From positions 124,001 to 188,000 of IMG/VR virus record IMGVR_UViG_3300029258_002750: 64,000 nt of DNA, one strand, 5' to 3'. The translations under genes and the position numbers were made by a program. Within the stretch, counting starts at the first letter, position 1; every line of letters begins with the position of its first letter. The notes beneath the pieces were generated by a model that saw only the letters and a program-made list of their open reading frames with translations, had not been told where the DNA came from and made no database searches. Of this stretch, positions 1,348 through 63,092 are shown piece after piece.

Positions 1348-1559
1348 CAGTCCAGCCACTTCTCGCACCCGCGTTTCATGTTCTCCAGCGCCTCGTACTG
1401 GGCTTCGGTCACGTGCCGCCGGTCCTCGATCCAGGCGCGGATGTCCCGCACTTTCTCCTCGACCGACCCGGCGAACTCCTCGGCCTTCTCGGGCAGCTCG
1501 TTGTCGATCATGTCGAGGATCTCATCGGCGATCTCGAGCGCGCTCTCCCAGTCAGCCAT
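1347..1559 (-). CDS. acidic helical hypothetical protein
   Basis: ATG at 1559 with GGAG upstream. Confidence 0.7.
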   Translation of the reverse strand: MADWESALEIADEILDMIDNELPEKAEEFAGSVEEKVRDIRAWIEDRRHVTEAQYEALENMKRGCEKWLD

Positions 1560-2208
1560 CTCGTCTCCCGCAGCAGCGCTTCCACTTCTTCCCGGAGCCA
1601 CAACCGCACGGTGCGTTGCGGCCTGTCTTCTTCCTCGGTCGGCGGTAGGTTCCGGCGTGCTTGAAGTAGCGGTGCAGGTGGCCATCGGACGTCATGGCCT
1701 CCTTGATGCCCAAGCCGGTGGTGAGCAGCCGCTCCAGCCAGTTGTCCGCGAACCACGACCACACGCCCCCGGGCAGCGGCGAGAACCGATCGTTGAGCAG
1801 CTCGGTCAGGTCGGTCAGGCCCTCGGGGGTCTCCTCCGACTCTTCGTTCACGTCCATCTGGTAGACCGCCCAGACGGCGATCTCGATGAGCGTGAGCACC
1901 TCGGTGACGCTGGCGTTGATGACCGATCCCTCGATGTGATCGGCCGCGCCGAACACGCGCAGGAGCAGCTTGGCGATGTCCTCGTCGTCCGGGTGGACGC
2001 CGTTCCGCTTCCGGGAGAGCCGGATACCCTCCTCGACGGCCTCGGGACACGTGGAGATGAGCCACTTGAAGATCAGGCCCGCGCCCTTCGGGGTCTCGAT
2101 CTCCCACGACGATCCCAGGCACGGGAATCCTTTACGGGCCGCGTGCTTGGTGGCGCGCGCCACGTCGGCCTGGATCTCGGCGATCATCTCGGGCGCGGGC
2201 TTCTCCAT
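1552..2208 (-). CDS. SEC-C motif protein
   Basis: C-terminal GRNAPCGCGSGKKWKRCCG; GGGTAGAAC-N6-ATG. Confidence 0.85.
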   Translation of the reverse strand: MEKPAPEMIAEIQADVARATKHAARKGFPCLGSSWEIETPKGAGLIFKWLISTCPEAVEEGIRLSRKRNGVHPDDEDIAKLLLRVFGAADHIEGSVINASVTEVLTLIEIAVWAVYQMDVNEESEETPEGLTDLTELLNDRFSPLPGGVWSWFADNWLERLLTTGLGIKEAMTSDGHLHRYFKHAGTYRRPRKKTGRNAPCGCGSGKKWKRCCGRRDG

Positions 2209-2223: not shown

Positions 2224-2493
2224 GGGACTGGCGCCCATCCAGCCGAGTTGTGTCACAGCATCAGGGATCTTGCAGCGGTCGCGCCGGACCGAGATGACTA
2301 GGCCGCTTGGCAGCTTCACCAGGTAGCAGTCCGGCGGCGCAATCATGTAGACCTTGGTGTGCCAGACGCCCTGGTCCCGCTGGTGTTGGGTGTGGATTCC
2401 CAAGTTCAGGTCTACGACCGTCCCCCACGTGTATCGGCAGCGTGGGAACGGTGGCGAGAAGATCACCCGGGAGCCGACCGTGAGGAAGTTCAC
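2218..2493 (-). CDS. SH3/KOW-like protein with C-tag
   Basis: LTVGSRVIF; ends DAVTQLGWM. Confidence 0.75.
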   Translation of the reverse strand: MNFLTVGSRVIFSPPFPRCRYTWGTVVDLNLGIHTQHQRDQGVWHTKVYMIAPPDCYLVKLPSGLVISVRRDRCKIPDAVTQLGWMGASPG

Positions 2494-3071
2494 CGGACGA
2501 CGGCGGCCAGCTGATCGATCGCGCTCAGGGGTCCCAACTCGTCCAGCTCCACGTGCAGGGAGGCGATCTTGATTCCTTTGGCCTCGAAAACGACCAGGAG
2601 CACGTAGTCCTGGTCTCGGCTCGGCTCGGTGGCGCACTTCCAGTCCTTCGCGCGCCTGCGCCATCGCCGGTAACCCGCGCCGTCGCGCATCCCCTCGGGC
2701 GGGTCGGTGTTGTCCCAGTACGGGTAGTCCTCGACGTAGTCCGGCATTACCAGGTTGCCGCGCAGCTCGTGCTCGCCCCAGGGGGAAGCGAAGGTGAAGC
2801 GACCCTTCTCGGGGATCCAGATCTTCCAGCCGCACTCCAGGTCGAACCACGGTCGCCGGAACGACTCCTTGGCGATCTCGCGGAACATATCCATCGTCGC
2901 CATCACGCGGTGGCTCCAGGTATCGACCTCGACCCTCTCGGCCTTGAGCTGAGATGCGATCAGGCGCGCCCGGTCCCGGATGATCTGCCACTGAGCGTGA
3001 CGGACGTCTCGAATGAACGCCGCCAACTTGGCCTTCGGAAAGCGCTTGCCTTCGTAGATCTTGGTGCTCAC
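2490..3071 (-). CDS. hypothetical protein with C-tag
   Basis: GTG 3071; ends SAIDQLAAV. Confidence 0.8.
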   Translation of the reverse strand: MSTKIYEGKRFPKAKLAAFIRDVRHAQWQIIRDRARLIASQLKAERVEVDTWSHRVMATMDMFREIAKESFRRPWFDLECGWKIWIPEKGRFTFASPWGEHELRGNLVMPDYVEDYPYWDNTDPPEGMRDGAGYRRWRRRAKDWKCATEPSRDQDYVLLVVFEAKGIKIASLHVELDELGPLSAIDQLAAVVR

Positions 3072-3325
3072 TCGCCTTTGCCCTCCTCGCGCAGCAGCCG
3101 ATCGCCCAGGACGGATAGACGGGTGATCGCGTTGTCGGTGTAGGGCTCCCAGTCGTCGTATTCGTCCGCTCGCGACATCTGCATCCACTCATAGGCCACG
3201 TCGCAGACGTAGATGTCTTCCTCGAAGCCGGTCATTCTTTCGGCGTACGCTGGCTCGTTGTTGATCGCGGCCGGTCGCTTCGCCAGGCCGCTCTCGCTCA
3301 TCTCGATCGCGCGGCGGACCTTCAC
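3068..3325 (-). CDS. DUF2829-like-outline protein with C-tag
   Basis: RRAIEMSESGLAKR...DDWEP; NAITRLSVL. Confidence 0.7.
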   Translation of the reverse strand: MKVRRAIEMSESGLAKRPAAINNEPAYAERMTGFEEDIYVCDVAYEWMQMSRADEYDDWEPYTDNAITRLSVLGDRLLREEGKGE

Positions 3326-6014: not shown

Positions 6015-6551
6015 TCACGACCACTCCTCCAGTCCGGTGATGAGCGCGCCGATCTCCGCCAGCTTGGTCTCGGCGACCGCAACCACGGCGCGGATCGCTT
6101 CTTCGGGCGTGTCTCCGTGCTCGGCCCATCTGCCGCCAGACGAGTCCGGGCTTCCCAGGAACGCGGTGTAGTGATCGGGCAGGATCGCGGCCAGCTGATC
6201 GATCGCCGATCCCTTCAGCGTGGTTTCGCCGGTCCGACAGTTGTACGTGCCGTGTCGCCAGTGCTCCTTGAGCTTGATCCTGCGGCACGGCGACCAGACC
6301 GTGTAGTGCCAGCCCATGTTCTCGTGCACCTCGGCGGTCCAGCCCTTGCCCATGTGCTTGGCCAGTGCGTGCGCACGGCGCCTCGCCACCTGGTAAGCCT
6401 TCCAGGTGCACTTCGTACCGCACCACGGCGCGCAGTAGAGGTCGCCTTTACGAACGGCGCGCTTCGAGTAGAGATCCTCGATCTCTTTCTCTCGCTCGGC
6501 GGCCGTCTTGATCTTCTTCCGCTTCCGCTTCCTCCTCGATCGCGTTGTCAT
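6015..6551 (-). CDS. hypothetical protein with internal C-tag
   Basis: internal SAIDQLAAI; leaderless start. Confidence 0.8.
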   Translation of the reverse strand: MTTRSRRKRKRKKIKTAAEREKEIEDLYSKRAVRKGDLYCAPWCGTKCTWKAYQVARRRAHALAKHMGKGWTAEVHENMGWHYTVWSPCRRIKLKEHWRHGTYNCRTGETTLKGSAIDQLAAILPDHYTAFLGSPDSSGGRWAEHGDTPEEAIRAVVAVAETKLAEIGALITGLEEWS

Positions 6552-7026: not shown

Positions 7027-7361
7027 AGATCCTCGATGCTCCGTAGGCCCAGCCGGACCTCTTCCAGAGCCTTCTTCCTGGCGGTGAGCCGATCGGCTTC
7101 GGCGAGCATGGCGGCAGCCTGGTCTCTAGTGTGCCGGTCGTACTCTCCGTCGGTGTCCCCGGCCACATGCTCTAGTCCTCGGACGGTTGCGGCGAACATC
7201 GCGTTGAGCCTGCGGTCGAATCTCTCCCGGCGACGCCAGTATGCCCAGCTGTGAATGAGCCGATACCACCAGGAGCCGTGGGCGAGCCGGTCGCTCTCGG
7301 CCCTCAGCTTTTCCAGCTCGCGCCGCATCGATTCGTGGAGCTGCATCTCCTCGGGGGTCAT
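7023..7361 (-). CDS. helical hypothetical protein
   Basis: ATG 7361 coupled. Confidence 0.7.
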
Positions 7362-7966
7362 GCGATTCTCCGGCCGCAGCACCGCTTGTACTTCTTCCCG
7401 CTCCGGCATGGGCACGGATCGTTGCGCCTGAGCTTCTCCCCGGGTCGGCGGTAGGTGGACGCGGCCCGCGTGATCCGGCTGTGGTGCTCCCTGGAGGCGC
7501 TGGCTTCCATTGCGGCTCCTGCTGACATGGTGACTCGGTTCCAGAACATCGACCAGGAACCAAACGCCAGGCGATCTCCATCGGCCAGGCACTCGAACCA
7601 CTCGATGAGCCCGTCGCCGGTCTTTCTGTCAACACCGTGCTCCTCGGCCGCGCTCGACAGCGTACCGGCGAGGAGGATCAGCCCTCCCGATCCAGTAAGG
7701 AACCGGACGCCGTAGCCCTCGGGCGTGCCCCGGAGCGCCTCGGTGATGGAGAGCATCTCCTCCTTGTCTCGATCAACCCACGGCTGCGACAGCATGTAGC
7801 GCTGGGCAACGTCCCAGGCCGGGTCGTTGACGACCTTCAGCAGGATCGGGATCGCGGCCCAGTCGACCTCGACGTACCAGCCTTCGTCGACCCACAGGAA
7901 CGTGTCGCGCACGTGTACTACGCCGTCCGCCATGTGGACCTGCATTCCGGGGAACAACTCGCTCAT
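7358..7966 (-). CDS. SEC-C motif protein
   Basis: C-terminal [18 protein letters not shown]; leaderless start. Confidence 0.85.
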
Positions 7967-11103: not shown

Positions 11104-11564
11104 CCGACAGGCCGAGCGACGCGTCCGACCTTCTCCGTGACCTGTGCGAGGACCAGCGGAAGGAGATCAAGCGACTCCGCCAGGAGATCGAGGAGTTCCA
11201 GGCCAGCGCTGACCTCCGATGGGACGCGGACATGCGCGCGATCAAGCGCTGGCAGGAGGCGACCGGCGCAACCGACACCTGGCCGGACCACGCCGACCTG
11301 TGCGTCTGGCTGCTGGAGCAGCTGGACACGCACAAGAAGGAGCAGGCGCGGGAGCTGCACGATCGCCTGAGCAAGCTGCGCTTCATGGCGCACGACGAGC
11401 ACTGCGAGATCTACGCGAAGATCATCAGCGATGCCCAGCATCGCCTCGACAACTGGGACCACGAGCCGACGCAGAAGGCCAAGATCGTTCCCGGGTGGTG
11501 GAAGCTGCCGCGCGATCCACAAGGCACGCCGCAGTGCCGCGCGTGCGGCACGTGGCTGGCATGA
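11100..11564 (+). CDS. coiled-coil protein with terminal Zn ribbon
   Basis: coupled; CRACGTW. Confidence 0.75.
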   Translation: MTDRPSDASDLLRDLCEDQRKEIKRLRQEIEEFQASADLRWDADMRAIKRWQEATGATDTWPDHADLCVWLLEQLDTHKKEQARELHDRLSKLRFMAHDEHCEIYAKIISDAQHRLDNWDHEPTQKAKIVPGWWKLPRDPQGTPQCRACGTWLA

Positions 11565-11896
11565 GCGAGCAGCCGAACTACGAACTGCTCTCCATGCTCT
11601 GTGAAGCGCCAGACAGTCAGATGGGCGAGACGCTCGTGGACATGCTCCGCAAGCTGCTTCCGTCGGCCGTCGAGCAGCTCGGCCGCGTGGCCGATCCCGA
11701 CGAAGACGAGGTGGCGCGCGTTCGTCGCGGACTTCACGAAGCGCTGGACCTCGCTGCCTACAGCTCGCTCGCATCTGGGTTCGTGATGCAGGTACTCGAC
11801 ATGGAGTGGAGACGGCTGGGCGGTTCGCCGGACGACCCGGCGCCGTGGCGCGAAGGACCGCCGTGGAATTGGGTCCAAGACGGAACGGAAGCCTGA
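11561..11896 (+). CDS. hypothetical protein with internal C-tag
   Basis: SAVEQLGRV. Confidence 0.7.
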   Translation: MSEQPNYELLSMLCEAPDSQMGETLVDMLRKLLPSAVEQLGRVADPDEDEVARVRRGLHEALDLAAYSSLASGFVMQVLDMEWRRLGGSPDDPAPWREGPPWNWVQDGTEA

Positions 11897-20117: not shown

Positions 20118-20344
20118 AGGTCGGCGACCGGATCGTCTACCGAGAGCTGTACGGCGACCGCATCCGCAGGCCGGGCCGGATCGAAGCAGACGGCTCGCGC
20201 GGCGGTGATGGACCTCCCTTCTGGATCATCCGGCTGGACGACGGCATCTCCTCCTTCCCAGTCGATGCCGACGCGCCCCAGCTCGAGCCCGAGCCCGCCG
20301 TGGATCAGCTCGCGCGGCTGGCCCCGGACCCCGACGGCCCATGA
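20114..20344 (+). CDS. SH3/KOW-like protein with C-tag
   Basis: MKVGDRIVY; PAVDQLARL. Confidence 0.8.
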   Translation: MKVGDRIVYRELYGDRIRRPGRIEADGSRGGDGPPFWIIRLDDGISSFPVDADAPQLEPEPAVDQLARLAPDPDGP

Positions 20345-20769
20345 AGCTAGAGACCGACCGCGTTTACCGAATCAAGGCGACTGTGTCACTTGCCTACGGG
20401 GGTCGGCTGGTTCGCATCGCGGCTCTCATCGGCGGCGGCGACGTGGGGGTCGGCTGGTTCCTCGACGCACCATCGGCGCAGACCGAGCGCTGGTTCTACG
20501 CGTCCGAGCTGGAGCCCGCGTCGGCCATCGATCTGCTGGCCGCCCTCGCCCCACGAGAGCCGAGTCAGCGCCGACCTCCCTCCTGTGAGGAGAATCGGGC
20601 CGCGCAGTCCGTGACCGAGCACCTGGTCAGGCAGCGGTACCAGTCTCCGTCGGCGATCGAGCGGCTGGCGGCGGTTACGGATGCGGCGGCTCGAGAGCGA
20701 GTGCGGGTCTACGATGATCGTGTGCGGGAGCTGGAGGAGTTCTTCAGGCTGACGCTGCCGGGGAGCTAG
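20341..20769 (+). CDS. SH3-like protein with two C-tag copies
   Basis: WFYASELEP SAIDLLAAL ... SAIERLAAV. Confidence 0.8.
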   Translation: MKLETDRVYRIKATVSLAYGGRLVRIAALIGGGDVGVGWFLDAPSAQTERWFYASELEPASAIDLLAALAPREPSQRRPPSCEENRAAQSVTEHLVRQRYQSPSAIERLAAVTDAAARERVRVYDDRVRELEEFFRLTLPGS

Positions 20770-27203: not shown

Positions 27204-27554
27204 TCAGGCGTCGTCGTTCGGGTTGTAATGCCAGCTCACCTTGAGCGGTACGCACACCAGCGGATCGTGCGTCTCGATGACGCCGGTCTTGTAGTTGATC
27301 TCGCCGACCGTGTTCCCCTGGCAGCGGAGCTTGCCCATCCCGTCGTCCGTCATCGGGTACGGATCGGTGACCAGCACCGAGCCGGGTCCCACGGGGAAGT
27401 AGGGCAGACGATAGCGGGTGGGTCGGCGCTGACCCGTCGCTACGTCGCCTAGCCGCTCGACTGCTGAGGGCTCCTCTGGCTCGATGGTGCTGCCGTCGAT
27501 GCGGTTGGAGGAGTAGTACTTGTTGGGCGGCGCGATGTCGTTGTAGTTGGTCAC
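27204..27554 (-). CDS. hypothetical protein with internal C-tag
   Basis: SAVERLGDV. Confidence 0.7.
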   Translation of the reverse strand: MTNYNDIAPPNKYYSSNRIDGSTIEPEEPSAVERLGDVATGQRRPTRYRLPYFPVGPGSVLVTDPYPMTDDGMGKLRCQGNTVGEINYKTGVIETHDPLVCVPLKVSWHYNPNDDA

Positions 27555-28702: not shown

Positions 28703-29064
28703 CCGACGCCGAGGCCATCAAGTGGCTCCGCAAGCACGGGTGTGTGGTGATCTTCCACGAGGACCGGATCATCGCGTTCCGGCCGCGAGGTCTGGTCAAC
28801 CTGTCCGCCGCCGGTAACAGCGACTCGCCGTCGCCGATGATCTCGTTCCCGCACGGCTCGACGTTCGGCTACACGGAGCACGCTGGCGAGACCGTCGCCG
28901 AGCTGGTCGAGCACGTTCGATCATGCTGGCTGGACAACGACGCTGGGGTAATCGATGGCCTGGCAGACTGCTGTGAGGAGAGCAGTCCGCCCGGCGTTGA
29001 GTTGTACGTCGGCACATCGATGCGGGAGAGATACCCAGGGCTCGTGGAGGAGGGTAAGGAATGA
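28699..29064 (+). CDS. hypothetical protein
   Basis: coupled ORF. Confidence 0.7.
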   Translation: MTDAEAIKWLRKHGCVVIFHEDRIIAFRPRGLVNLSAAGNSDSPSPMISFPHGSTFGYTEHAGETVAELVEHVRSCWLDNDAGVIDGLADCCEESSPPGVELYVGTSMRERYPGLVEEGKE

Positions 29065-29378
29065 GCTACGAGGACTACGAGGCCCACAAGGCGGAGATGG
29101 AGCGAGTTGTTCCGCAGATCGCCACCGAGCTTGGAGAGGCGCTGGAGTCCGCGCCGCCGGAGGTGAAGGGAGCCTTCTTCATCGTCGCCGGGTCGCTCGG
29201 CAACGGGATGATGGGCCTGTTCGGAGGGCGTCGAGCCGTCGCCCGAGCCCGACGACGCGGGCTTTGCGGGCTAACGTCGTTGTTCAACTCGACGGCGCGG
29301 GACGCGGCCTTCGGGATTCTGCGCAAGTGGATGGTCGAGACGTTCGACTGGTACTCCGCGCACGAAGGACTGTCGTGA
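29061..29378 (+). CDS. hypothetical protein
   Basis: coupled ORF. Confidence 0.7.
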   Translation: MSYEDYEAHKAEMERVVPQIATELGEALESAPPEVKGAFFIVAGSLGNGMMGLFGGRRAVARARRRGLCGLTSLFNSTARDAAFGILRKWMVETFDWYSAHEGLS

Positions 29379-29641
29379 ACGATCGCGGCTTCCGACCCGG
29401 TGACCGCGTGTGGATCGATCCCTCTCAGGAGGAGGTCTGGAGGGAGACTCGTCGGCCGATCTACGTGATCTCCTACTTCGGCCAGCGCGAGATCGGCGGT
29501 CGCGAGCGGCCGTGCGCGAGGCTTGCTGTAGCACCGGGGCCGAGCACCTGGGCGTCCAGGCAGAATCCGCCGTCGTGGGTCCCAATCGAATGGCTGCGGC
29601 ACGCCGATGATCTGGTGACGCGCCTCGGGAGGCTCGCGTGA
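29375..29641 (+). CDS. SH3/KOW-like protein with C-tag
   Basis: FRPGDRVWI; DLVTRLGRL. Confidence 0.8.
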   Translation: MNDRGFRPGDRVWIDPSQEEVWRETRRPIYVISYFGQREIGGRERPCARLAVAPGPSTWASRQNPPSWVPIEWLRHADDLVTRLGRLA

Positions 29642-29877
29642 GCGAGTTCCGCGTTCGCGATCGGGTGAGGATCGCCGAGGATCGTCGGCGTCCCGGCAAG
29701 TTCATGATTCTGGGACTCGAGCCCAAGCGGGCACGCGGGGCCGACCTGGCGGTTCCGTGTGCGCTCGTGCAGCGGCTCAGGGAGGGTCTGGGAGAGATCA
29801 ATCAGGTCTTCTGGATCGAGGAGAGCGCGCTGGAGCACGCCGAGGATGCTGTGTCGCGGCTCGGGAGGCTCGCGTGA
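29638..29877 (+). CDS. SH3/KOW-like protein with C-tag
   Basis: FRVRDRVRI; DAVSRLGRL. Confidence 0.8.
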   Translation: MSEFRVRDRVRIAEDRRRPGKFMILGLEPKRARGADLAVPCALVQRLREGLGEINQVFWIEESALEHAEDAVSRLGRLA

Positions 29878-30278
29878 GGGGCAACACGACGACCTGTCCG
29901 ATGTGCCGTGGGGAGGCCAAGCGTACCGGGGCTTCCGAGGTTGATCTGGTCCTTCAGCTCCGCCAGCTGTTCGCCTGTCAGTTTTGCGACTGGTCGGGAT
30001 GGTTACCCGGCGAGGAGCTGGACAACATGCGCGCGCTCGGCGGTGTCTCGCCCGAGTTCCGCGTTGGGGATCGCGTGCGAGTCAACGAGCACTACGGCCT
30101 CCAGCCTGGCATCTACGTGGTGATGGAGACGGGCCTGCGCGTCGATCCCGAGACTCACGGACTGAGGATGTCGGCTCTCATCTCGCTCGAACGGGTCGGC
30201 GTTGACGCCGTCACGATCTCTGTCGAGTACCTTGACCATGTGGACGACGCTGTGACCAGGCTGGGTAGGCTCTCGTGA
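29874..30278 (+). CDS. Zn ribbon + SH3-like protein with C-tag
   Basis: CPMC...CQFC; FRVGDRVRV; DAVTRLGRL. Confidence 0.8.
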   Translation: MRGNTTTCPMCRGEAKRTGASEVDLVLQLRQLFACQFCDWSGWLPGEELDNMRALGGVSPEFRVGDRVRVNEHYGLQPGIYVVMETGLRVDPETHGLRMSALISLERVGVDAVTISVEYLDHVDDAVTRLGRLS

Positions 30279-30511
30279 GCTTCGCGACACTGTTCTGCGG
30301 CGGCTTCCGCGCGGGTGACCGTGTGCGTGTGAAGGGCGTCGAGATCATCGGCCGGATCAGGAAGTTTGAGATGCGCGCGGAGGAAGTGAAGGGCCTCGTG
30401 ATGTGGGCGATGGTGGTGTCGGAGACCCCTCGCATCGGCGCCGTCTGGTCGAAGATCGCCGAGCTGGAGCACGCGAGCGATGCCGTCACACGGCTGGGTC
30501 GGTTGGTGTGA
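30275..30511 (+). CDS. SH3/KOW-like protein with C-tag
   Basis: FRAGDRVRV; DAVTRLGRL. Confidence 0.8.
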   Translation: MSFATLFCGGFRAGDRVRVKGVEIIGRIRKFEMRAEEVKGLVMWAMVVSETPRIGAVWSKIAELEHASDAVTRLGRLV

Positions 30512-30604
30512 AGGTCTACCTGATCTATCTTCGTCGTCGCGCTCGTGCGCGAGAGGGAGGTCCGGGGATCGGTCGTCGATGCACTGGCGGAGGTGGTGCG
30601 ATGA
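30508..30604 (+). pseudogene. frameshifted C-tagged mini-gene
   Basis: GTG 30508 frame VKVYLIY; +1 frame FVVALVREREVRGSVVDALAEVVR* ends in ATGA overlap. Confidence 0.5.
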
Positions 30605-30840
30605 GGGAGACGGCCTTCGCCGTTGGCGACCGCGTGCGGTGGGCGGTTGGTGTCGAGCATGTTGCGCATCTCGCAGCGTCTCGTATGCGGGGAAGGGTCA
30701 CGAATATCGTAAGAGGTGGTCGTCTGCACGTGGTCTGGGACGGATCGTGCTACGAGTGTCCTCCGGTCTTCGTGTGGCCCAAAGACCTGGAGACGGTAGA
30801 CGCCGTCTCTCAGCTTGGGGAACTGGCCGATGGAGTATGA
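30601..30840 (+). CDS. SH3/KOW-like protein with C-tag
   Basis: FAVGDRVRW; DAVSQLGEL. Confidence 0.8.
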   Translation: MRETAFAVGDRVRWAVGVEHVAHLAASRMRGRVTNIVRGGRLHVVWDGSCYECPPVFVWPKDLETVDAVSQLGELADGV

Positions 30841-31099
30841 AGGCCCTGCGTTCCGGCCTGGTGATCGTGTCCGCTGGCTCTCGTGGAAGAACAACCGCGC
30901 TGGCTTCCCGTCTGTTCGACACGGATGGGTCCGCCGAATCGTCGAGCCAGCGCGCTCCGCTCACGGGCCGCGTCTGCTGATCGATGTCGATCCGTTCTGG
31001 GGCGAGGTACCGACGGCGATTGAGCTTCTGCCGCACCTGCACGGGGTCCGCAAGCTCTCGGCCATCGACGCGCTCGCCCAGCTGATGAGGAACCCGTGA
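30830..31099 (+). CDS. SH3/KOW-like protein with C-tag
   Basis: FRPGDRVRW; SAIDALAQL. Confidence 0.8.
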   Translation: MEYEGPAFRPGDRVRWLSWKNNRAGFPSVRHGWVRRIVEPARSAHGPRLLIDVDPFWGEVPTAIELLPHLHGVRKLSAIDALAQLMRNP

Positions 31100-32516: not shown

Positions 32517-32756
32517 ATGGTGCGAGCCGGGCTAAGAGAGGGCGAGAGGGTCTGGGTGCGGGCGATCGGGGGGTCGCTCGAGCGCGCGCCCCGCCGGGCC
32601 ACGGTCACCTGCACCGGGTCTTCGGCTCTGCCGACCCCGGCTCGCTACTACGACGTCGAGTTCGACGCGGGCGATGAGCGGCGGCTCTGGCTCGGCGACC
32701 ACAACTACGACGTGTGGAAGCGATCCGCGATCGATCGGCTAGGAGAGCTGGCATGA
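32517..32756 (+). CDS. SH3/KOW-like protein with C-tag
   Basis: LREGERVWVR; SAIDRLGEL. Confidence 0.8.
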   Translation: MVRAGLREGERVWVRAIGGSLERAPRRATVTCTGSSALPTPARYYDVEFDAGDERRLWLGDHNYDVWKRSAIDRLGELA

Positions 32757-59297: not shown

Positions 59298-59467
59298 TTC
59301 TTCTCCGTGCACCGCTTGCAGCGTCGCCGTCTCGCGATCGGTTTGCTCGCGTCGACCAGCGTGTAGTGACCGCACTCCAGGTACTCGACGCGGAACTGGC
59401 TCATGACCGACTCGCCGTTCGGCTTGTCGTTCGACTGTCGCACGACCCTGCGGAGCGGAGCGGCCAT
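59294..59467 (-). CDS. small Zn-finger protein
   Basis: LECGH...RRCKRC; both ends coupled. Confidence 0.7.
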   Translation of the reverse strand: MAAPLRRVVRQSNDKPNGESVMSQFRVEYLECGHYTLVDASKPIARRRRCKRCTEKK

Positions 59468-60483
59468 TAGTAGCGCGCCCCAGAGATTCCGCTCGCGCTC
59501 ACGTAGTCCGGGTCGCCGGGGATGGCCGAGGCGCCGACCGTCGCGGGCTCCTCGGTGGTCCCGTTTGCGGCCTTCTCCAGCTTGTTGACGAGCTTCTCGA
59601 AGAAGCCGCGCTGCTTGCCGCCCGGCGCGAACGAGCCGAACTTGACGACCTTCGCGGCGATGTCCTTGATCGCGTTGCGCTCGTAGTCGTCGAGCTTGCT
59701 CGCGCCAGCGTCCCACGCCTTCCGGGAGCGGTTGATCAGTTCGGCGTCGTCGGCCGCCAGCTCGGCCAGGTCGTCGTCGGGGACCGGCTGGGTGGGCTCG
59801 CCCATCTTGACCGTCTCGGGCTCCGGCTCGCTGGCCTTCTGGGCGTCCAGCTCGGCCTGCTTGTCGAGCACCGGCTCGAGCCGCTTGATCCACTCCTGCG
59901 CGGTCTTCCGCACGCAGGTGCCGTCGAGCACCTTGTAGGCGTTCTTCGAGAGTGCCTTGCGGTCGTACCAGGAGAGGACCGACCGTGCCTTGTAGCCGGT
60001 CTTGTGGAAGAGCGCGTAGACCGTCTGGCGCGCCGTCTTGTCCTCCTCGACCGAGAGACCGCGCGTCTCCAGCAGCTCCAGGCAGAGGTCTTCGCAGACC
60101 TTCACCTTCATCGCGGCCTTGCACTTGGACATCTCCTTGTCCCAGCGCTTGAGGGCCTCGAGCTTCTCGGCCGACTCCGGCACCGCGTCCAGCCAGTCGG
60201 TGATGCACTTGGACCCGACCGGGGAGAGGGTGACCTCCTCGGTTCGCACGAGGCCGGTCGCGACCTTGCCGAGCGCGGTCGGCGTGTCGGGCGCCTCGAA
60301 GTGGATCGCGAAGAGCCACTTGATGTTCTTGTGCTCGCAGAGGATGCAGTCGTCGCCGTCGTCCTCGTAGCCGATGAACTCGGGGTGTGCGAAGGCGACG
60401 TCGTGGTCGCCGAGGCCGTGCTTCGCGAACACCTCGGCGCGCTTCAGGTTGTGCTTGTTGATCGTCTTCTTGCTGAGTGCCAC
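59467..60483 (-). CDS. hypothetical protein with Zn finger
   Basis: CILCEH...VGSKCI; AAGGAG RBS. Confidence 0.8.
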   Translation of the reverse strand: MALSKKTINKHNLKRAEVFAKHGLGDHDVAFAHPEFIGYEDDGDDCILCEHKNIKWLFAIHFEAPDTPTALGKVATGLVRTEEVTLSPVGSKCITDWLDAVPESAEKLEALKRWDKEMSKCKAAMKVKVCEDLCLELLETRGLSVEEDKTARQTVYALFHKTGYKARSVLSWYDRKALSKNAYKVLDGTCVRKTAQEWIKRLEPVLDKQAELDAQKASEPEPETVKMGEPTQPVPDDDLAELAADDAELINRSRKAWDAGASKLDDYERNAIKDIAAKVVKFGSFAPGGKQRGFFEKLVNKLEKAANGTTEEPATVGASAIPGDPDYVSASGISGARY

Positions 60484-60501
60484 TGTGTGACTCCTTCCAC
60501 C

Positions 60502-60532
60502 CCTCTCAACAACCAGGCGTCTGGTTCTCACA
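60502..60532 (-). promoter_or_regulatory. bipartite motif TGTGAGAAC-N11-TTGTTGAGAGG
   Basis: copy 4. Confidence 0.7.
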
Positions 60533-60565: not shown

Positions 60566-61126
60566 ATGGACTTGTGCTCGCCAGGAATGCCCTCTAGCCG
60601 TAGGATGTCTGGGTCCTACGAGGCCATGGGGGTTACGACAATGCTGGACTTACGTCTGTCCGACTCACGGCTGTGGCACTATCGGGCGGTGGTCACCCGA
60701 GTGATCGACGGTGACACCGTCGAAGCGCACATCGACTGCGGGTTCGGTAACTACCGGGTCGAGCGGCTCCGGCTCGCGAGGGTGGACGCGCCCGAGATGA
60801 GGCCGCGTCGGGGCACGCCCGAGCAGAAGGAGGCCGAGCGAGCTGTCGCGGCAGAGTCCAAGGACCGTGTGATCGAGTTGGTCCAGGGCCGCGAGTGCAT
60901 GATCCGCACCTACAAGACCGGCAACTTCGGCAGGTGGATCGCCGACGTCCACCTCCCTGACGATGCGGTCTCCGCGCTAGGCCGTGTCGCATCGGACGAG
61001 CCGTTGAAGACCGTCAACGAGGTGCTCATCGAGGAGAAGCTGGCGATCCAGTACGGAGGGAAGAAGCCGGACAACTGGGAGGAGTACCGCAACCAGCCCC
61101 GGCCCGAGGAGGCCGGAGAGGCGTAG
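60566..61126 (+). CDS. thermonuclease (SNase-fold) with inserted C-tag
   Basis: RVIDGDT, RLARVDAPE, NFGRWIADV, VNEVLIEEKLA; start may be later (60605-60641). Confidence 0.85.
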   Translation: MDLCSPGMPSSRRMSGSYEAMGVTTMLDLRLSDSRLWHYRAVVTRVIDGDTVEAHIDCGFGNYRVERLRLARVDAPEMRPRRGTPEQKEAERAVAAESKDRVIELVQGRECMIRTYKTGNFGRWIADVHLPDDAVSALGRVASDEPLKTVNEVLIEEKLAIQYGGKKPDNWEEYRNQPRPEEAGEA

Positions 61127-61694: not shown

Positions 61695-62056
61695 TGGGGG
61701 AGCCGCTCGACGAGACGATGGCCCGGCGGCCAGAGATCAGGAAGCGGATGGTCTACATTCGCCGCAAGGCGATGGGGCCGCCGCCGCCGGAGACGCCCGA
61801 GGCCGAGCTGGTCGACGAGATGATCCGCGAGGCCGCGATCGACTTCGATCTCTCGCCGGTCCTCTCAGGCGACAAGCTCCTGGCCCAGCGAGTGGCCGAT
61901 GACTTCGTGAGGGACCTCAGGAAGAAGGTCAGCGCCGACACGGAGATATCGGATGAGGATCTCGAGAAACGGCTTGAGATGCTGTGGCCGTGGTTCTACC
62001 GCTCGCTGAACATCTTCCGCAACCGGCTCAAGACCGCAATTGGAGGACAGTCGTGA
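61694..62056 (+). CDS. hypothetical protein
   Basis: TGATG coupled. Confidence 0.75.
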   Translation: MGEPLDETMARRPEIRKRMVYIRRKAMGPPPPETPEAELVDEMIREAAIDFDLSPVLSGDKLLAQRVADDFVRDLRKKVSADTEISDEDLEKRLEMLWPWFYRSLNIFRNRLKTAIGGQS

Positions 62057-62607
62057 GTTTCTACGATCGCATCGTCGAAGGCGGCGGCTACGACGACCCG
62101 CCCGACCTTTCCGAGTTCCAGCGCCAGGTGCTCAGGGCTGCGCGGGCGACGCCCAGCGTGAGTGGCACGGGCCGGTTTATCGGCGGAAAGGCGGCGGGTT
62201 CAGTCATCAAGACCATGCGCAAGCAGGGCGTCACCGTGAAGGCGGCGGAGGGCAAGAAGAAGGTAGAGAAGGCGCTCGCCCAGCTCCACAAGCGCGGCCT
62301 AGTCTGGACCCGGCGCGAGGGTACCTGGTCCGGCAAGGCAGGTGGCGAGGTCTTCCACACGCGCGTCTCCACGCCATCCGCAACCTCGATCAAGAGGGGC
62401 GGCTACGTCGACCTGTTGCTCAAGAAGCTGAAGAAGGCTGGCATCAAGACGGCGACGACGTGCCAGCTCGACTACAGCAAGACCCTGAACCGGCGCGAGG
62501 GGATCGGTATGTCCATCGCCGATGTCGTGAAGCTCGCCGCACTTCCGTCCTTCAAGCTCCCGACGAAGGACGAAGCCCGCGCCCACAGGCACGCGAAGGG
62601 GAAGTAG
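62053..62607 (+). CDS. basic protein, possible internal head protein
   Basis: starts MSFYDRIVE-G; Lys-rich. Confidence 0.7.
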   Translation: MSFYDRIVEGGGYDDPPDLSEFQRQVLRAARATPSVSGTGRFIGGKAAGSVIKTMRKQGVTVKAAEGKKKVEKALAQLHKRGLVWTRREGTWSGKAGGEVFHTRVSTPSATSIKRGGYVDLLLKKLKKAGIKTATTCQLDYSKTLNRREGIGMSIADVVKLAALPSFKLPTKDEARAHRHAKGK

Positions 62608-63092
62608 TGGTCCCGTACGGTCTGGCAGAAGGAGCGCTCATCTACGCGGCCGATGGTTCGATCATCATGCCAACGTCGATCGAGAAGCTCGCCAAGACCG
62701 GGGAGCAGCCCGAGGTTCTCGCCTACCACAAGAAGAAGGACAGGATCGTCAAGGTTGTGGCGCAGTACCCACGGATGGCCAGTACCGAGGCCGAGATCGT
62801 GGAGGTGACCCTCTTCAACATGCACAAGCTCCGATGCACGCCGAACCACAAGGTGCTCACGACGGTTGGCCTCATCGAAGCCAGGGACCTGAGGACGGGC
62901 GACAAGCTCGTTAGTCCGTCTGCCGGAGCGGGCATTCCCGGCCAGTTCATGTTCACCGCCAACAGGGCCAATCGCGTGGCGGTCGCGGGCGACCCTGTCC
63001 CAGCTGGAAAAGCGCGTGTGTTCGACATCACCACCACGACGGGCAACTTCGTTTGCGAGGGTATCGTCGTCTGCGGCAAGGATGCGAAGTGA
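62607..63092 (+). CDS. stand-alone Hint (intein-like) domain, predicted splicing-inactive
   Basis: block A GLAEGALIYAADG, block B LRCTPNHKVL, block F VFDITT..GNFVCEGIVVC. Confidence 0.8.
   Translation: MVPYGLAEGALIYAADGSIIMPTSIEKLAKTGEQPEVLAYHKKKDRIVKVVAQYPRMASTEAEIVEVTLFNMHKLRCTPNHKVLTTVGLIEARDLRTGDKLVSPSAGAGIPGQFMFTANRANRVAVAGDPVPAGKARVFDITTTTGNFVCEGIVVCGKDAK

What the first reader, a model, noticed from the sequence alone, without database searches (positions are those of the whole stretch)
60953..61012. C-tag inserted into a loop of an otherwise canonical SNase nuclease
In SNase-family nucleases the segment GR.LA.V is usually followed within a few residues by VN..LV..GLA. Here about 20 extra residues, LPDDAVSALGRVASDEPLKT, containing a good tag, sit at that position. 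Internal tags also occur in 6015-6551, 11561-11896 and 27204-27554. This suggests the tag is a mobile module that does not need a free C-terminus, which argues for a docking helix and against a classical C-terminal degron.
Basis: partly seen in the sequence, partly recalled or inferred. Interest (0 to 1): 0.7.

Follow-up and report, generated by a model that had tools for sequence, protein, structure and literature searches.

The report
Shared helix tag inside phage nuclease
A staphylococcal-type nuclease of an uncultivated 275-kb phage carries, in a surface loop, an 11-12-residue copy of a short helical motif found on about a quarter of the phage's proteins, so the motif is probably a docking label, though its partner is unknown.

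Summary
Window 60953-61012 encodes LPDDAVSALGRVASDEPLKT inside an intact SNase-fold nuclease: Pfam PF00565 is above its cutoff, Foldseek matches S. aureus nuclease, and the catalytic residues align.

The surplus is 11-12 residues, not 20. The closest homolog (81% identical over the tree's alignment columns) differs by a clean 33-nt indel, DDAVSALGRVA.

That segment matches a genome-wide motif, xxP[S/D]A[V/I][D/E][R/Q]L[G/A]x[L/I/V][A/V]. There are 89 hits in 85 of about 307 crudely called proteins, against about 2 in reversed sequences. The nuclease's leave-one-out score is 15.8 bits.

- Conservation lies at codon positions 1-2, so it acts on the protein.
- Tagged proteins are mutually unrelated.
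- 48 of 89 tags lie within 12 residues of the C-terminus and 29 lie more than 40 away.
- The virion module has almost none.
- DNA polymerase A has three tags in loops that vary by indel among homologs.

These points argue against a classical C-terminal degron and fit a portable helical module. "Docking" remains inference. No partner was found, and a clamp-nuclease complex prediction gave no answer. Nothing shows recent DNA-level mobility.

The parts
60566..61126 (+). SNase-family nuclease gene. This is the longest ORF. The start is probably ATG 60641, because homologs begin about 8 residues before the conserved RLWxYR.
60707..60718 (+). DGDT motif, aligned to S. aureus nuclease D19-T22. It includes the Ca2+ ligand D21.
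   Evidence: (invariant columns)
60770..60796 (+). RLARVDAPE, aligned to S. aureus R35...D40-T41-P42-E43 (catalytic Arg, Asp and Glu).
60932..60934 (+). Arg of the GRW motif, equivalent to S. aureus R87. It is invariant among 36 homologs.
60953..61012 (+). The flagged 20-residue loop LPDDAVSALGRVASDEPLKT, lying between the beta-strand WIADVH and the helix VNEVLIEE.
60953..60994 (+). 14-residue tag match LPDDAVSALGRVAS. It scores 17.8 bits, or 15.8 leave-one-out. AF2 models PDDAVSALG as a helix, followed by a low-confidence linker.
60959..60991 (+). 33-nt segment DDAVSALGRVA, absent from the closest homolog P0002. An equivalent register of 36 nt (60959-60994) is flanked by a 5-nt GACGA repeat.
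6177..6218 (-). Internal tag LKGSAIDQLAAILP in the 178-aa ORF 6015-6551, 53 residues from the C-terminus.
11654..11695 (+). Internal tag LLPSAVEQLGRVAD in ORF 11561-11896. My crude gene call missed this ORF.
27435..27476 (-). Internal tag EEPSAVERLGDVAT in the 116-aa ORF 27204-27554, 76 residues from the C-terminus.
29836..29877 (+). Example of a C-terminal tag (HAEDAVSRLGRLA, then stop). It belongs to a cluster of small proteins at 28955-31099. An ESM Atlas look at a similar tagged 79-aa protein (32517-32756) suggests SH3-like barrels.
2493..2534 (-). C-terminal tag GPLSAIDQLAAVVR of the 232-aa ORF 2490-3188. It is conserved in nine orthologs down to 52% identity.

Best explanation
The window comes from a 275-kb, 65% GC genome of an uncultivated phage with a T4-type head. 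About a quarter of its non-virion proteins carry one short motif, xxP-[S/D]-A-[V/I]-[D/E/T/S]-[R/Q]-L-[G/A]-x-[L/I/V]-[A/V]. The motif reads as an N-capped amphipathic helix. It usually sits at or near the C-terminus, but it is also embedded in surface loops of folded enzymes.

The SNase nuclease at 60566-61126 is one such enzyme. An 11-12-residue tag core sits in the turn between the strand that follows the catalytic GR motif and the next helix. From the known S. aureus structure this turn is away from the active-site residues, and those residues are all intact.

Shown: the motif is real, it is selected at the protein level, it is shared by unrelated proteins, it is conserved in orthologs, it can be gained or lost as a unit, and it is predicted to be helical.

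Inferred: the helix is a docking element that brings its carriers to one common partner. On this reading the nuclease is an optional client, recruited in this lineage and not in its sister. The partner could be phage-encoded or from the host and is not identified. The phage's own bacterial-type beta sliding clamp is one testable candidate.
For: - Abundance: 89 hits in 85 of about 307 proteins, against about 2 in reversed sequences. At >=15 bits there are 78 hits against 0.18 expected from shuffles.
- Protein-level selection: the information lies at codon positions 1-2. Codon identity among tags is 0.44 against 0.42 expected. 32 of 35 DNA-pattern hits inside called genes are sense and in frame.
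- Carriers are unrelated: with tags masked there are 83 BLAST clusters for 85 proteins.
- Position: 48 of 89 tags lie within 12 residues of the C-terminus (10.7 expected), and 29 lie more than 40 away.
- Distribution: 4 of 69 genes in the virion module carry a tag, against 81 of 238 elsewhere (Fisher 6e-7).
- Nuclease: the loop is 20 residues against 5-12 in homologs without the insert. There is a clean 33-nt indel against the sister sequence. The window protein and P0002 are sisters (99/93) and differ in this state; starred branches force at least 2 changes, and the best tree needs 5.
- Structure: helix at 106-114, then a low-pLDDT linker.
- Independent case: PolA carries three tags at loop sites that are indel-polymorphic among 22 homologs. 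Two of the three are modelled as helices.
- Purifying selection: the C-terminal tag of the 232-aa protein is kept in nine orthologs down to 52% identity.
- Clade-wide: the tag family is present in related genomes, including three whose nuclease lacks the insert.
Against: - No binding partner was identified.
- The clamp-dimer plus nuclease complex prediction scored 0.00, and the tool says to treat that as no evidence either way.
- Inserts in other SNase homologs score lower on this genome's PSSM (5.8-15.5; one does not register). The insert could therefore have drifted, or could have been a plain loop helix first.
- One of the three PolA tags is not modelled as a helix.
- The tag helix in the nuclease has fairly high pLDDT (about 81), so it may pack on its own domain rather than stand free.
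- My gene calls are crude (GC3 filter), so the exact counts are approximate.
Confidence: 0.5

Rival explanations
1. The tag is a turnover signal. A host or phage protease (Lon, FtsH or ClpXP type) recognises the exposed amphipathic segment and clears non-structural proteins on schedule. On this reading the nuclease copy limits the enzyme's lifetime.
For: About half of the tags are near the C-terminus. Nine end exactly in -LA, -LV, -LS, -LL or -LT followed by the stop, which recalls the non-polar end of ssrA tags. Tags are nearly absent from virion proteins, which must persist.
Against: 41 of 89 tags are more than 12 residues from the C-terminus, and 0-12 variable residues follow most 'C-terminal' ones. 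There are three copies inside the essential DNA polymerase. The conserved features are those of an N-capped helix over about 11 residues, not a terminal tripeptide.
Confidence: 0.15
2. The nuclease insert is an ordinary lineage-specific loop elaboration. It is a short helix that stabilises or tunes the enzyme and resembles the tag only because both are small amphipathic helices built from the same GC-rich amino-acid palette.
For: Loop length varies across the SNase family; one IMG/VR homolog has a 21-residue loop that is not tag-like. Several homolog inserts score below the tag threshold. The helix has pLDDT of about 81.
Against: The leave-one-out score is 15.8 bits, with chance about 5e-4 for this protein. 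The indel against the sister equals the tag core. P0018 carries a differently registered insert at the same loop that scores 18.5. The same behaviour is seen at three PolA loops.
Confidence: 0.12
3. The tag is specifically a binding motif for the phage-encoded bacterial-type beta sliding clamp. This is a sub-case of docking. Polymerase, helicase, nucleases and many small proteins would ride on or compete for the clamp.
For: The genome encodes a DnaN-type clamp at genome 31955-33067. Known clamp-binding motifs are short and lie at termini or in loops. M. tuberculosis PolI has a lineage-specific internal motif, QLSLLDD (bioRxiv 10.64898/2026.09.19.751633). PolA, a ResIII helicase, SNase and an HNH nuclease are tagged, while DnaB, the DnaC-like loader, primase and RecA are not. 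A clamp is also present in a related genome.
Against: The tag does not fit QL[S/D]LF. Its fourth position is polar and it has no aromatic residue (the consensus is from my own knowledge). Conservation extends over an 11-residue helix. About 60 small proteins of unknown function would be an odd set of clamp clients. The complex prediction gave no support, though the tool says this is not evidence against binding.
Confidence: 0.1
4. The repeat is a DNA- or RNA-level element that merely gets translated. It could be a promoter, a terminator, a recombination or cassette-boundary site, or an in-frame selfish insert like Rickettsia palindromic elements.
For: Many tags sit at the 3' ends of small genes in densely packed arrays. 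There is some codon bias inside the tag: Asp is GAT in 62% of cases against 39.5% expected before a C (p=0.0025), and CGG is enriched for Arg.
Against: Third codon positions carry no more information than background. Codon identity among tags is 0.44 against 0.42 expected. Hits are sense and in frame. Distance to the stop varies from 0 to 855 codons. The GAT bias mostly reflects genome-wide GATC enrichment.
Confidence: 0.05

Closest known systems
Staphylococcal nuclease / thermonuclease family (Pfam PF00565; S. aureus Nuc)
   Same: OB-fold, the catalytic residues (D21, R35, D40, E43, R87 equivalents), size, and a phage-borne context shared with many homologs.
   Different: The turn after the strand that follows GR is 11-15 residues longer and holds a helix absent from S. 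aureus Nuc and from most homologs.
Hub-docking short linear motifs such as bacterial beta-clamp-binding motifs and PCNA PIP boxes
   Same: A short motif shared by unrelated proteins, found at termini or in loops, sometimes in several copies, and gained or lost in particular lineages. The M. tuberculosis PolI internal motif is an example.
   Different: The consensus is different and longer. The tag is predicted helical with an N-cap and has no aromatic anchor. It is present on about 28% of a viral proteome, and the partner is unknown.
Cargo-targeting peptides: encapsulin cargo-loading peptides, microcompartment encapsulation peptides, the T4 capsid-targeting sequence
   Same: A portable short peptide, often an amphipathic helix on a linker, that addresses unrelated proteins to one assembly (from my own knowledge).
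   Different: Those peptides are terminal, whereas this tag also sits inside folded domains. Virion proteins here are almost tag-free, so it is not a capsid-packaging signal. I did not search for a shell or compartment gene.
ssrA-type C-terminal degrons
   Same: A subset of tags ends in non-polar -LA or -LV at the very C-terminus.
   Different: Most tags are followed by more residues or are internal, and the nuclease copy is 43 residues from the end.
Rickettsia palindromic elements (in-frame selfish DNA in coding genes)
   Same: Short segments found inserted in frame in unrelated genes, including conserved enzymes (from my own knowledge).
   Different: There is no DNA-level repeat identity here, and conservation is on the peptide. 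The tag is 11-14 residues long, whereas those elements encode about 30-50.

Membership tests
SNase / thermonuclease (PF00565) | Profile match above the curated threshold | tested here: met
   25.4 bits against a cutoff of 21, E = 2e-5. Most of the 38 homologs carry PF00565.
SNase / thermonuclease (PF00565) | OB-fold barrel with three helices, as in S. aureus nuclease | tested here: met
   AF2 pLDDT 89 and pTM 0.82. Foldseek probability 1.00 to 1stn, 1syc and others, TM 0.55-0.67.
SNase / thermonuclease (PF00565) | Catalytic and Ca2+-binding residues (D21, R35, D40, E43, R87 of S. aureus) | tested here: met
   DGDT, RLARVDAPE and GR align to them. D25, R44, E52 and R98 are invariant in 36 homologs. 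T41 is Ala here.
SNase / thermonuclease (PF00565) | Ca2+-dependent nuclease activity | not testable with these tools
   Needs an enzyme assay.
This genome's tag motif (xxP[SD]A[VI][DE][RQ]L[GA]x[LIV][AV]) | PSSM score above the reversed-sequence threshold | tested here: met
   17.8 bits, or 15.8 leave-one-out, against a threshold of 12.55.
This genome's tag motif (xxP[SD]A[VI][DE][RQ]L[GA]x[LIV][AV]) | Predicted short helix starting after the S/D cap | tested here: met
   Helix at 106-114 of the 161-aa protein. Also seen at PolA sites 2 and 3, but not at site 1.
This genome's tag motif (xxP[SD]A[VI][DE][RQ]L[GA]x[LIV][AV]) | Location at or near the C-terminus | tested here: not met
   The tag is 43 residues from the end. 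The same holds for 41 of 89 tags, so this is not a defining feature of the family.
This genome's tag motif (xxP[SD]A[VI][DE][RQ]L[GA]x[LIV][AV]) | Binds the same partner as the other tags | not testable with these tools
   The partner is unknown, and the one complex job gave no answer.
Beta-clamp-binding motif | Consensus QL[S/D]LF or QLxLxL | tested here: not met
   The tag core is [RQ]L[GA][DEA][LIV][AV]. Position 4 is polar or small and there is no Phe. The consensus is from my own knowledge.
Beta-clamp-binding motif | Docks in the clamp's hydrophobic cleft | tested here: inconclusive
   Clamp dimer plus SNase scored 0.00, and the tool states this is no evidence for or against binding.
ssrA-like C-terminal degron | Motif abuts the free C-terminus | tested here: not met
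   The nuclease tag is internal. Only 14 of 89 tags end at the stop.
In-frame selfish DNA repeat (RPE-like) | Copies recognisably similar at the DNA level, synonymous sites included | tested here: not met
   Codon identity at identical residues is 0.44 against 0.42 expected. The best DNA match of the nuclease tag to another tag is 25 of 42 nt.
Capsid or compartment cargo-targeting peptide | Carriers end up in one assembly, and a shell or scaffold gene is present | not tested
   Virion-module proteins are nearly tag-free, which argues against capsid packaging. I did not search for other shells.

The most novel reading that the evidence does not exclude
The tag is an address label of a proteome-wide recruitment system in a clade of uncultivated T4-type jumbo phages. 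A linear, portable helix, usable at a terminus or in a loop and in up to three copies per protein, would send the polymerase, helicases, nucleases and dozens of small early proteins to a single phage-built hub or replication compartment. This would be a viral counterpart of an NLS or PIP box. Enzymes such as this nuclease would be enrolled or dropped simply by gaining or losing 11 codons.
Probability: 0.2. Interest if true: 0.9.

Novelty: new variant of a known kind. Interest (0 to 1): 0.62.

Why it matters
If the tag is a docking label, one 11-residue peptide organises roughly a quarter of a large phage's proteome. Whole enzymes would be plugged into or out of that network by a tiny indel. 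That would be a simple, evolvable wiring principle not described for phages in the literature I could search.

It also gives a practical handle. The tag peptide is a ready bait for finding the hub, and the hub could explain what dozens of small 'hypothetical' early proteins have in common.

For the nuclease itself, the insert-bearing and insert-free sister sequences are a natural experiment for testing recruitment separately from catalysis.

Tried and rejected
- Megablast of the region against GenBank phages: no match.
- Major capsid protein by tblastn: only about 30% identity to known T4-type phages, so no named relative.
- Pfam on eight tagged small proteins: nothing.
- Literature search for six tag strings: no paper. 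Keyword searches for phage short motifs and clamp motifs gave only the M. tuberculosis PolI precedent.
- IMG/VR scans with SNase and PolA profiles: only distant relatives (at most 48% and 31% identity), useless for tag co-occurrence.
- The metagenome scan with PolA gave short, more distant contigs with few tags and no clamp in reach.
- Clamp-dimer plus SNase complex prediction: score 0.00, no answer.
- The idea that the small tagged proteins are one paralog family whose conserved end is the 'tag' was rejected. With tags masked they do not match each other, though an Atlas search suggests at least some share an SH3-like fold.
- The idea of a DNA element was rejected on codon-position and synonymous-site evidence.
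- The neighbour's PDTPTALGKVATGL (ORF 59467-60531) looks tag-like by eye but scores -21 to -26, so it is not a tag.
- Several contigs of homologs could not be read because the sample file was too large.
- No model coordinates were available, so I could not measure whether the helix's hydrophobic face is exposed.

Full report
**1. The observation**

Window 60953-61012 on the + strand translates to LPDDAVSALGRVASDEPLKT, in frame within ORF 60566-61126. The protein is a staphylococcal-type nuclease on four counts:
- Pfam PF00565 scores 25.4 bits against a curated cutoff of 21.
- An AlphaFold2 model built on 36 homologs has mean pLDDT 89.
- Foldseek matches that model to S. aureus nuclease structures with probability 1.00.
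- A phmmer alignment to the S. aureus enzyme places DGDT, RLARVDAPE and GR on D21, R35, D40, E43 and R87. These residues are invariant or nearly so among the homologs.

The likely start is the ATG at 60641, because homologs begin a few residues before the conserved RLWxYR.

**2. Size of the insertion**

Between the strand WIADVH and the helix VNEVLIEE the window protein has 20 residues. The 26 homologs without the insert have 5-12. In S. aureus the corresponding stretch is about 15 residues shorter. Of 23 IMG/VR SNase loci that a regular expression could parse, 22 have 8-15 residues in a slightly wider stretch where the window has 23. The remaining one has 21 residues that look nothing like the tag.

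A codon-level alignment with the closest homolog, P0002, shows a clean 33-nt indel, DDAVSALGRVA. P0002 is 73% identical by BLAST and 81% over the columns used for the tree. The DNA on both sides of the indel is nearly identical. The surplus is thus 11-12 residues, and it equals the core of the tag. The flanking LP and P..T are part of the ordinary short loop.

**3. What the tag is**

The whole 275,101-bp contig was laid out, and a GC3-based gene call gave about 307 genes. An iterated 14-column PSSM found 89 hits in 85 proteins, while reversed sequences gave about 2 at the same threshold. At 15 bits or more there are 78 hits, against 0.18 expected from 200 shuffles of the proteome.

The consensus is xxP-[S/D]-A-[V/I]-[D/E/T/S]-[R/Q]-L-[G/A]-x-[L/I/V]-[A/V]-x. 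Read as a helix, Pro followed by Ser or Asp is an N-cap, and A5, V6, L9, G/A10, L12 and A13 form one hydrophobic face. That reading is my inference from the pattern.

The nuclease segment LPDDAVSALGRVAS scores 17.8 bits, or 15.8 when it is left out of the matrix. For a protein of this length that is a chance of about 5e-4.

My gene call missed at least five further tagged ORFs in the window, so the counts are lower bounds.

**4. Protein-level or DNA-level**

- Information content sits at codon positions 1 and 2. Third positions inside the motif look like third positions outside it.
- At residues that two tags share, the codons are identical 44% of the time, against 42% expected from genome codon usage.
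- The best DNA match between the nuclease's tag and any other tag is 25 of 42 nt.
- A degenerate DNA pattern for the core hits the genome 53 times, against about 1 in shuffles. Of the 35 hits inside called genes, 32 are sense and in frame.
- An excess of GAT for Asp in the tag (62%) is largely explained by a genome-wide preference for GATC. GAT is used 39.5% of the time before C and 8-23% otherwise, and GATC is 3.2 times over-represented.

The motif is therefore kept by selection on the peptide. There is no sign of recent copying of DNA.

**5. Who carries it**

With tags masked, the 85 carriers fall into 83 BLAST clusters. None of the eight small carriers tested has a Pfam family. One looks like a small SH3-like barrel in the ESM Atlas.

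Larger carriers include:
- DNA polymerase A, with three tags.
- A ResIII helicase.
- A DnaB_C-like ATPase.
- An HNH endonuclease.
- A 2123-residue protein.
- This nuclease.

No tag was found in the following:
- the clamp, DnaB, the DnaC-like ATPase, primase and RecA;
- the UvrD-like giant helicase;
- ribonucleotide reductase, thymidine kinase and a nucleotidase;
- NUDIX, the methylases and a radical-SAM enzyme;
- MazG.

Only 4 of 69 genes in the virion module (187-265 kb) carry a tag, against 81 of 238 elsewhere (Fisher 6e-7).

48 of 89 tags lie within 12 residues of the C-terminus (10.7 expected if placement were uniform). 29 lie more than 40 residues away, and only one is near an N-terminus.

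**6. Is the nuclease insert a unit that comes and goes**

Among 36 homologs, ten have the long loop: the window protein, P0003-P0009, P0012 and P0018. All of them sit in the same gene neighbourhood, upstream of a T4-type portal.

On a tree built without the loop columns:
- The window protein and P0002 are sisters (99/93) yet differ in state.
- P0012 and P0018 form a supported pair inside an otherwise short-loop group.
- Starred branches force at least two changes, and the best tree needs five.

The tree is unrooted for this purpose, so gain cannot be told from loss. All distant family members are short, which suggests the short loop is ancestral.

The homologs' inserts keep P-E/D-D-V/A-I/V-x-x-L-x-R while the following linker varies. 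On this genome's matrix they score from 18.5 (P0018) down to 5.8, and P0008's insert does not register.

**7. An independent case: DNA polymerase A**

The three tags in the polymerase's exonuclease half lie at three loop positions. Among 22 homologs each position is either short or holds a tag-like segment, in different combinations:
- Site 1 is filled in 5 homologs.
- Site 2 is filled in 7.
- Site 3 is filled in about 7.

AF2 models sites 2 and 3 as helices starting right after the cap residue. Site 2 is followed by a low-confidence linker, and site 1 is modelled as coil. This is the same behaviour as in the nuclease, in an unrelated enzyme.

**8.

The test was whether close homologs from tag-free genomes carry the same insertion. 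I found no tag-free genome in the clade.

Tags occur in the neighbours of the insert-less nucleases P0002 and P0015. They occur on the 120-kb contig of the insert-less P0011, through the ortholog P0236 with GMPSVVELLAKLAP. They also occur in the replication modules of three more relatives, whatever the state of their polymerase.

The nuclease is therefore an optional carrier within a clade that has the tag system throughout. The refuting case was not met, but contigs holding insert-bearing homologs were mostly too short or unreadable to test it fully.

**9. Reality of the sequence**

The 1.2-kb stretch, insert included, is present without indels in Logan contigs from sediment runs of 2018 and seawater runs of 2021. 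Variant contigs differing by a few substitutions keep the insert as well. Some of these runs may be the source of the window's assembly, so they are not all independent.

**10. Mechanism**

What is shown is a protein-level, portable, mostly helical motif. It is shared by unrelated non-virion proteins, tolerated at termini and in loops, sometimes multivalent, and conserved in orthologs.

The simplest reading is a docking helix for one common partner, and I hold that at about 0.5. I could not name the partner.

The genome encodes a bacterial-type beta clamp. Clamp-binding motifs share several properties with the tag, and M. tuberculosis PolI offers a precedent for a lineage-specific internal motif in a family A polymerase. 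However:
- The tag does not fit the clamp consensus.
- Sixty small clients would be odd.
- The only complex job (clamp dimer plus nuclease) scored 0.00, which the tool says is no evidence either way.

The rivals (degron, plain structural loop, DNA element) are weighed in their own sections. A degron that reads the free C-terminus is excluded for the nuclease and for about half of all tags. A protease that reads internal segments is not excluded.

**11. Novelty**

String searches for six tag variants found no paper, and keyword searches found nothing similar in phages. The phage itself has only about 30% capsid identity to named phages.

The kind of thing is known: a short motif that addresses many proteins to one partner. 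Its scale on a viral proteome, and its use inside folded enzymes, appear to be new. I rate it a new variant of a known kind. The nuclease insertion is a clean and useful instance rather than the whole story.

Noticed in passing
G000 genome 40799-43639 (outside the window; locus L090:799-3639): DNA polymerase A carries three tags in its exonuclease half, at loops that are indel-polymorphic among homologs. It also contains an intein.
   Followed up: yes
Whole genome; in the window the effect is seen in every tag with I/V-D-R/Q: GATC is 3.2 times over-represented (2805 observed against 887 expected). Asp is coded GAT 39.5% of the time before C and 8-23% otherwise. Two N6/N4 DNA methylase genes lie at genome 43662-46072.
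   Followed up: partly
window 60959-60999: A 5-nt direct repeat, GACGA, flanks a 36-nt register of the tag-coding segment (CCT|GACGAT...GCATCG|GACGAG). Deletion between the repeats would give LP-DE-PLKT, much like the short-loop homologs. It may be chance.
   Followed up: no
window 28955-31099: A run of small adjacent ORFs begins with F-R-x-G-D-R-V-R-like strands and ends in the sub-flavour H-x-D-D-A-V-[ST]-R-L-G-R-L-[ASV] followed by the stop. An Atlas search of a similar 79-aa protein (32517-32756) points to SH3-like barrels (DUF3104, DsrB, R67 DHFR, ROF).
   Followed up: partly
window 1552-2208 (-), 7358-7966 (-); genome 120667-121314 (-): Three paralogous proteins of about 200-218 aa end in a SEC-C-like metal-binding tail (for example RNDPCWCGSGKKHKRCCGRR). 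I recognised this by eye and did not test it against Pfam.
   Followed up: no
window 62040-63092 and downstream; genome 187810-194747: There are Hint/intein-like sequences just downstream of the nuclease, and inteins and homing-endonuclease domains in the portal and prohead-protease genes of relatives. HNH endonuclease genes are frequent across the genome.
   Followed up: no
genome 1960-4367, 17340-19016, 36989-38950: The phage encodes a Ro60/TROVE-vWA protein, an AAA_5 (MoxR/CobS-like) ATPase, a DUF2201 metallopeptidase-VWA protein and a CobT-like VWA protein. These could be chaperone-like or hub candidates. None was tested.
   Followed up: no
window 59467-60531 (-): The divergently transcribed neighbour contains PDTPTALGKVATGL. 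It looks like a tag by eye but scores -21 to -26 on the PSSM, so it is not a member.
   Followed up: yes
window 60946-60974: In two metagenome runs, short pieces of other contigs (3.2 kb and 4.0 kb) match the strand-to-tag junction with 3 mismatches in 29 nt. They may be related nuclease alleles that also carry the insert.
   Followed up: no
window 20341-20769 (+): A 142-aa protein carries two tags (EPASAIDLLAALAP and QSPSAIERLAAVTD), 43 residues apart. It is another multivalent carrier besides PolA.
   Followed up: no
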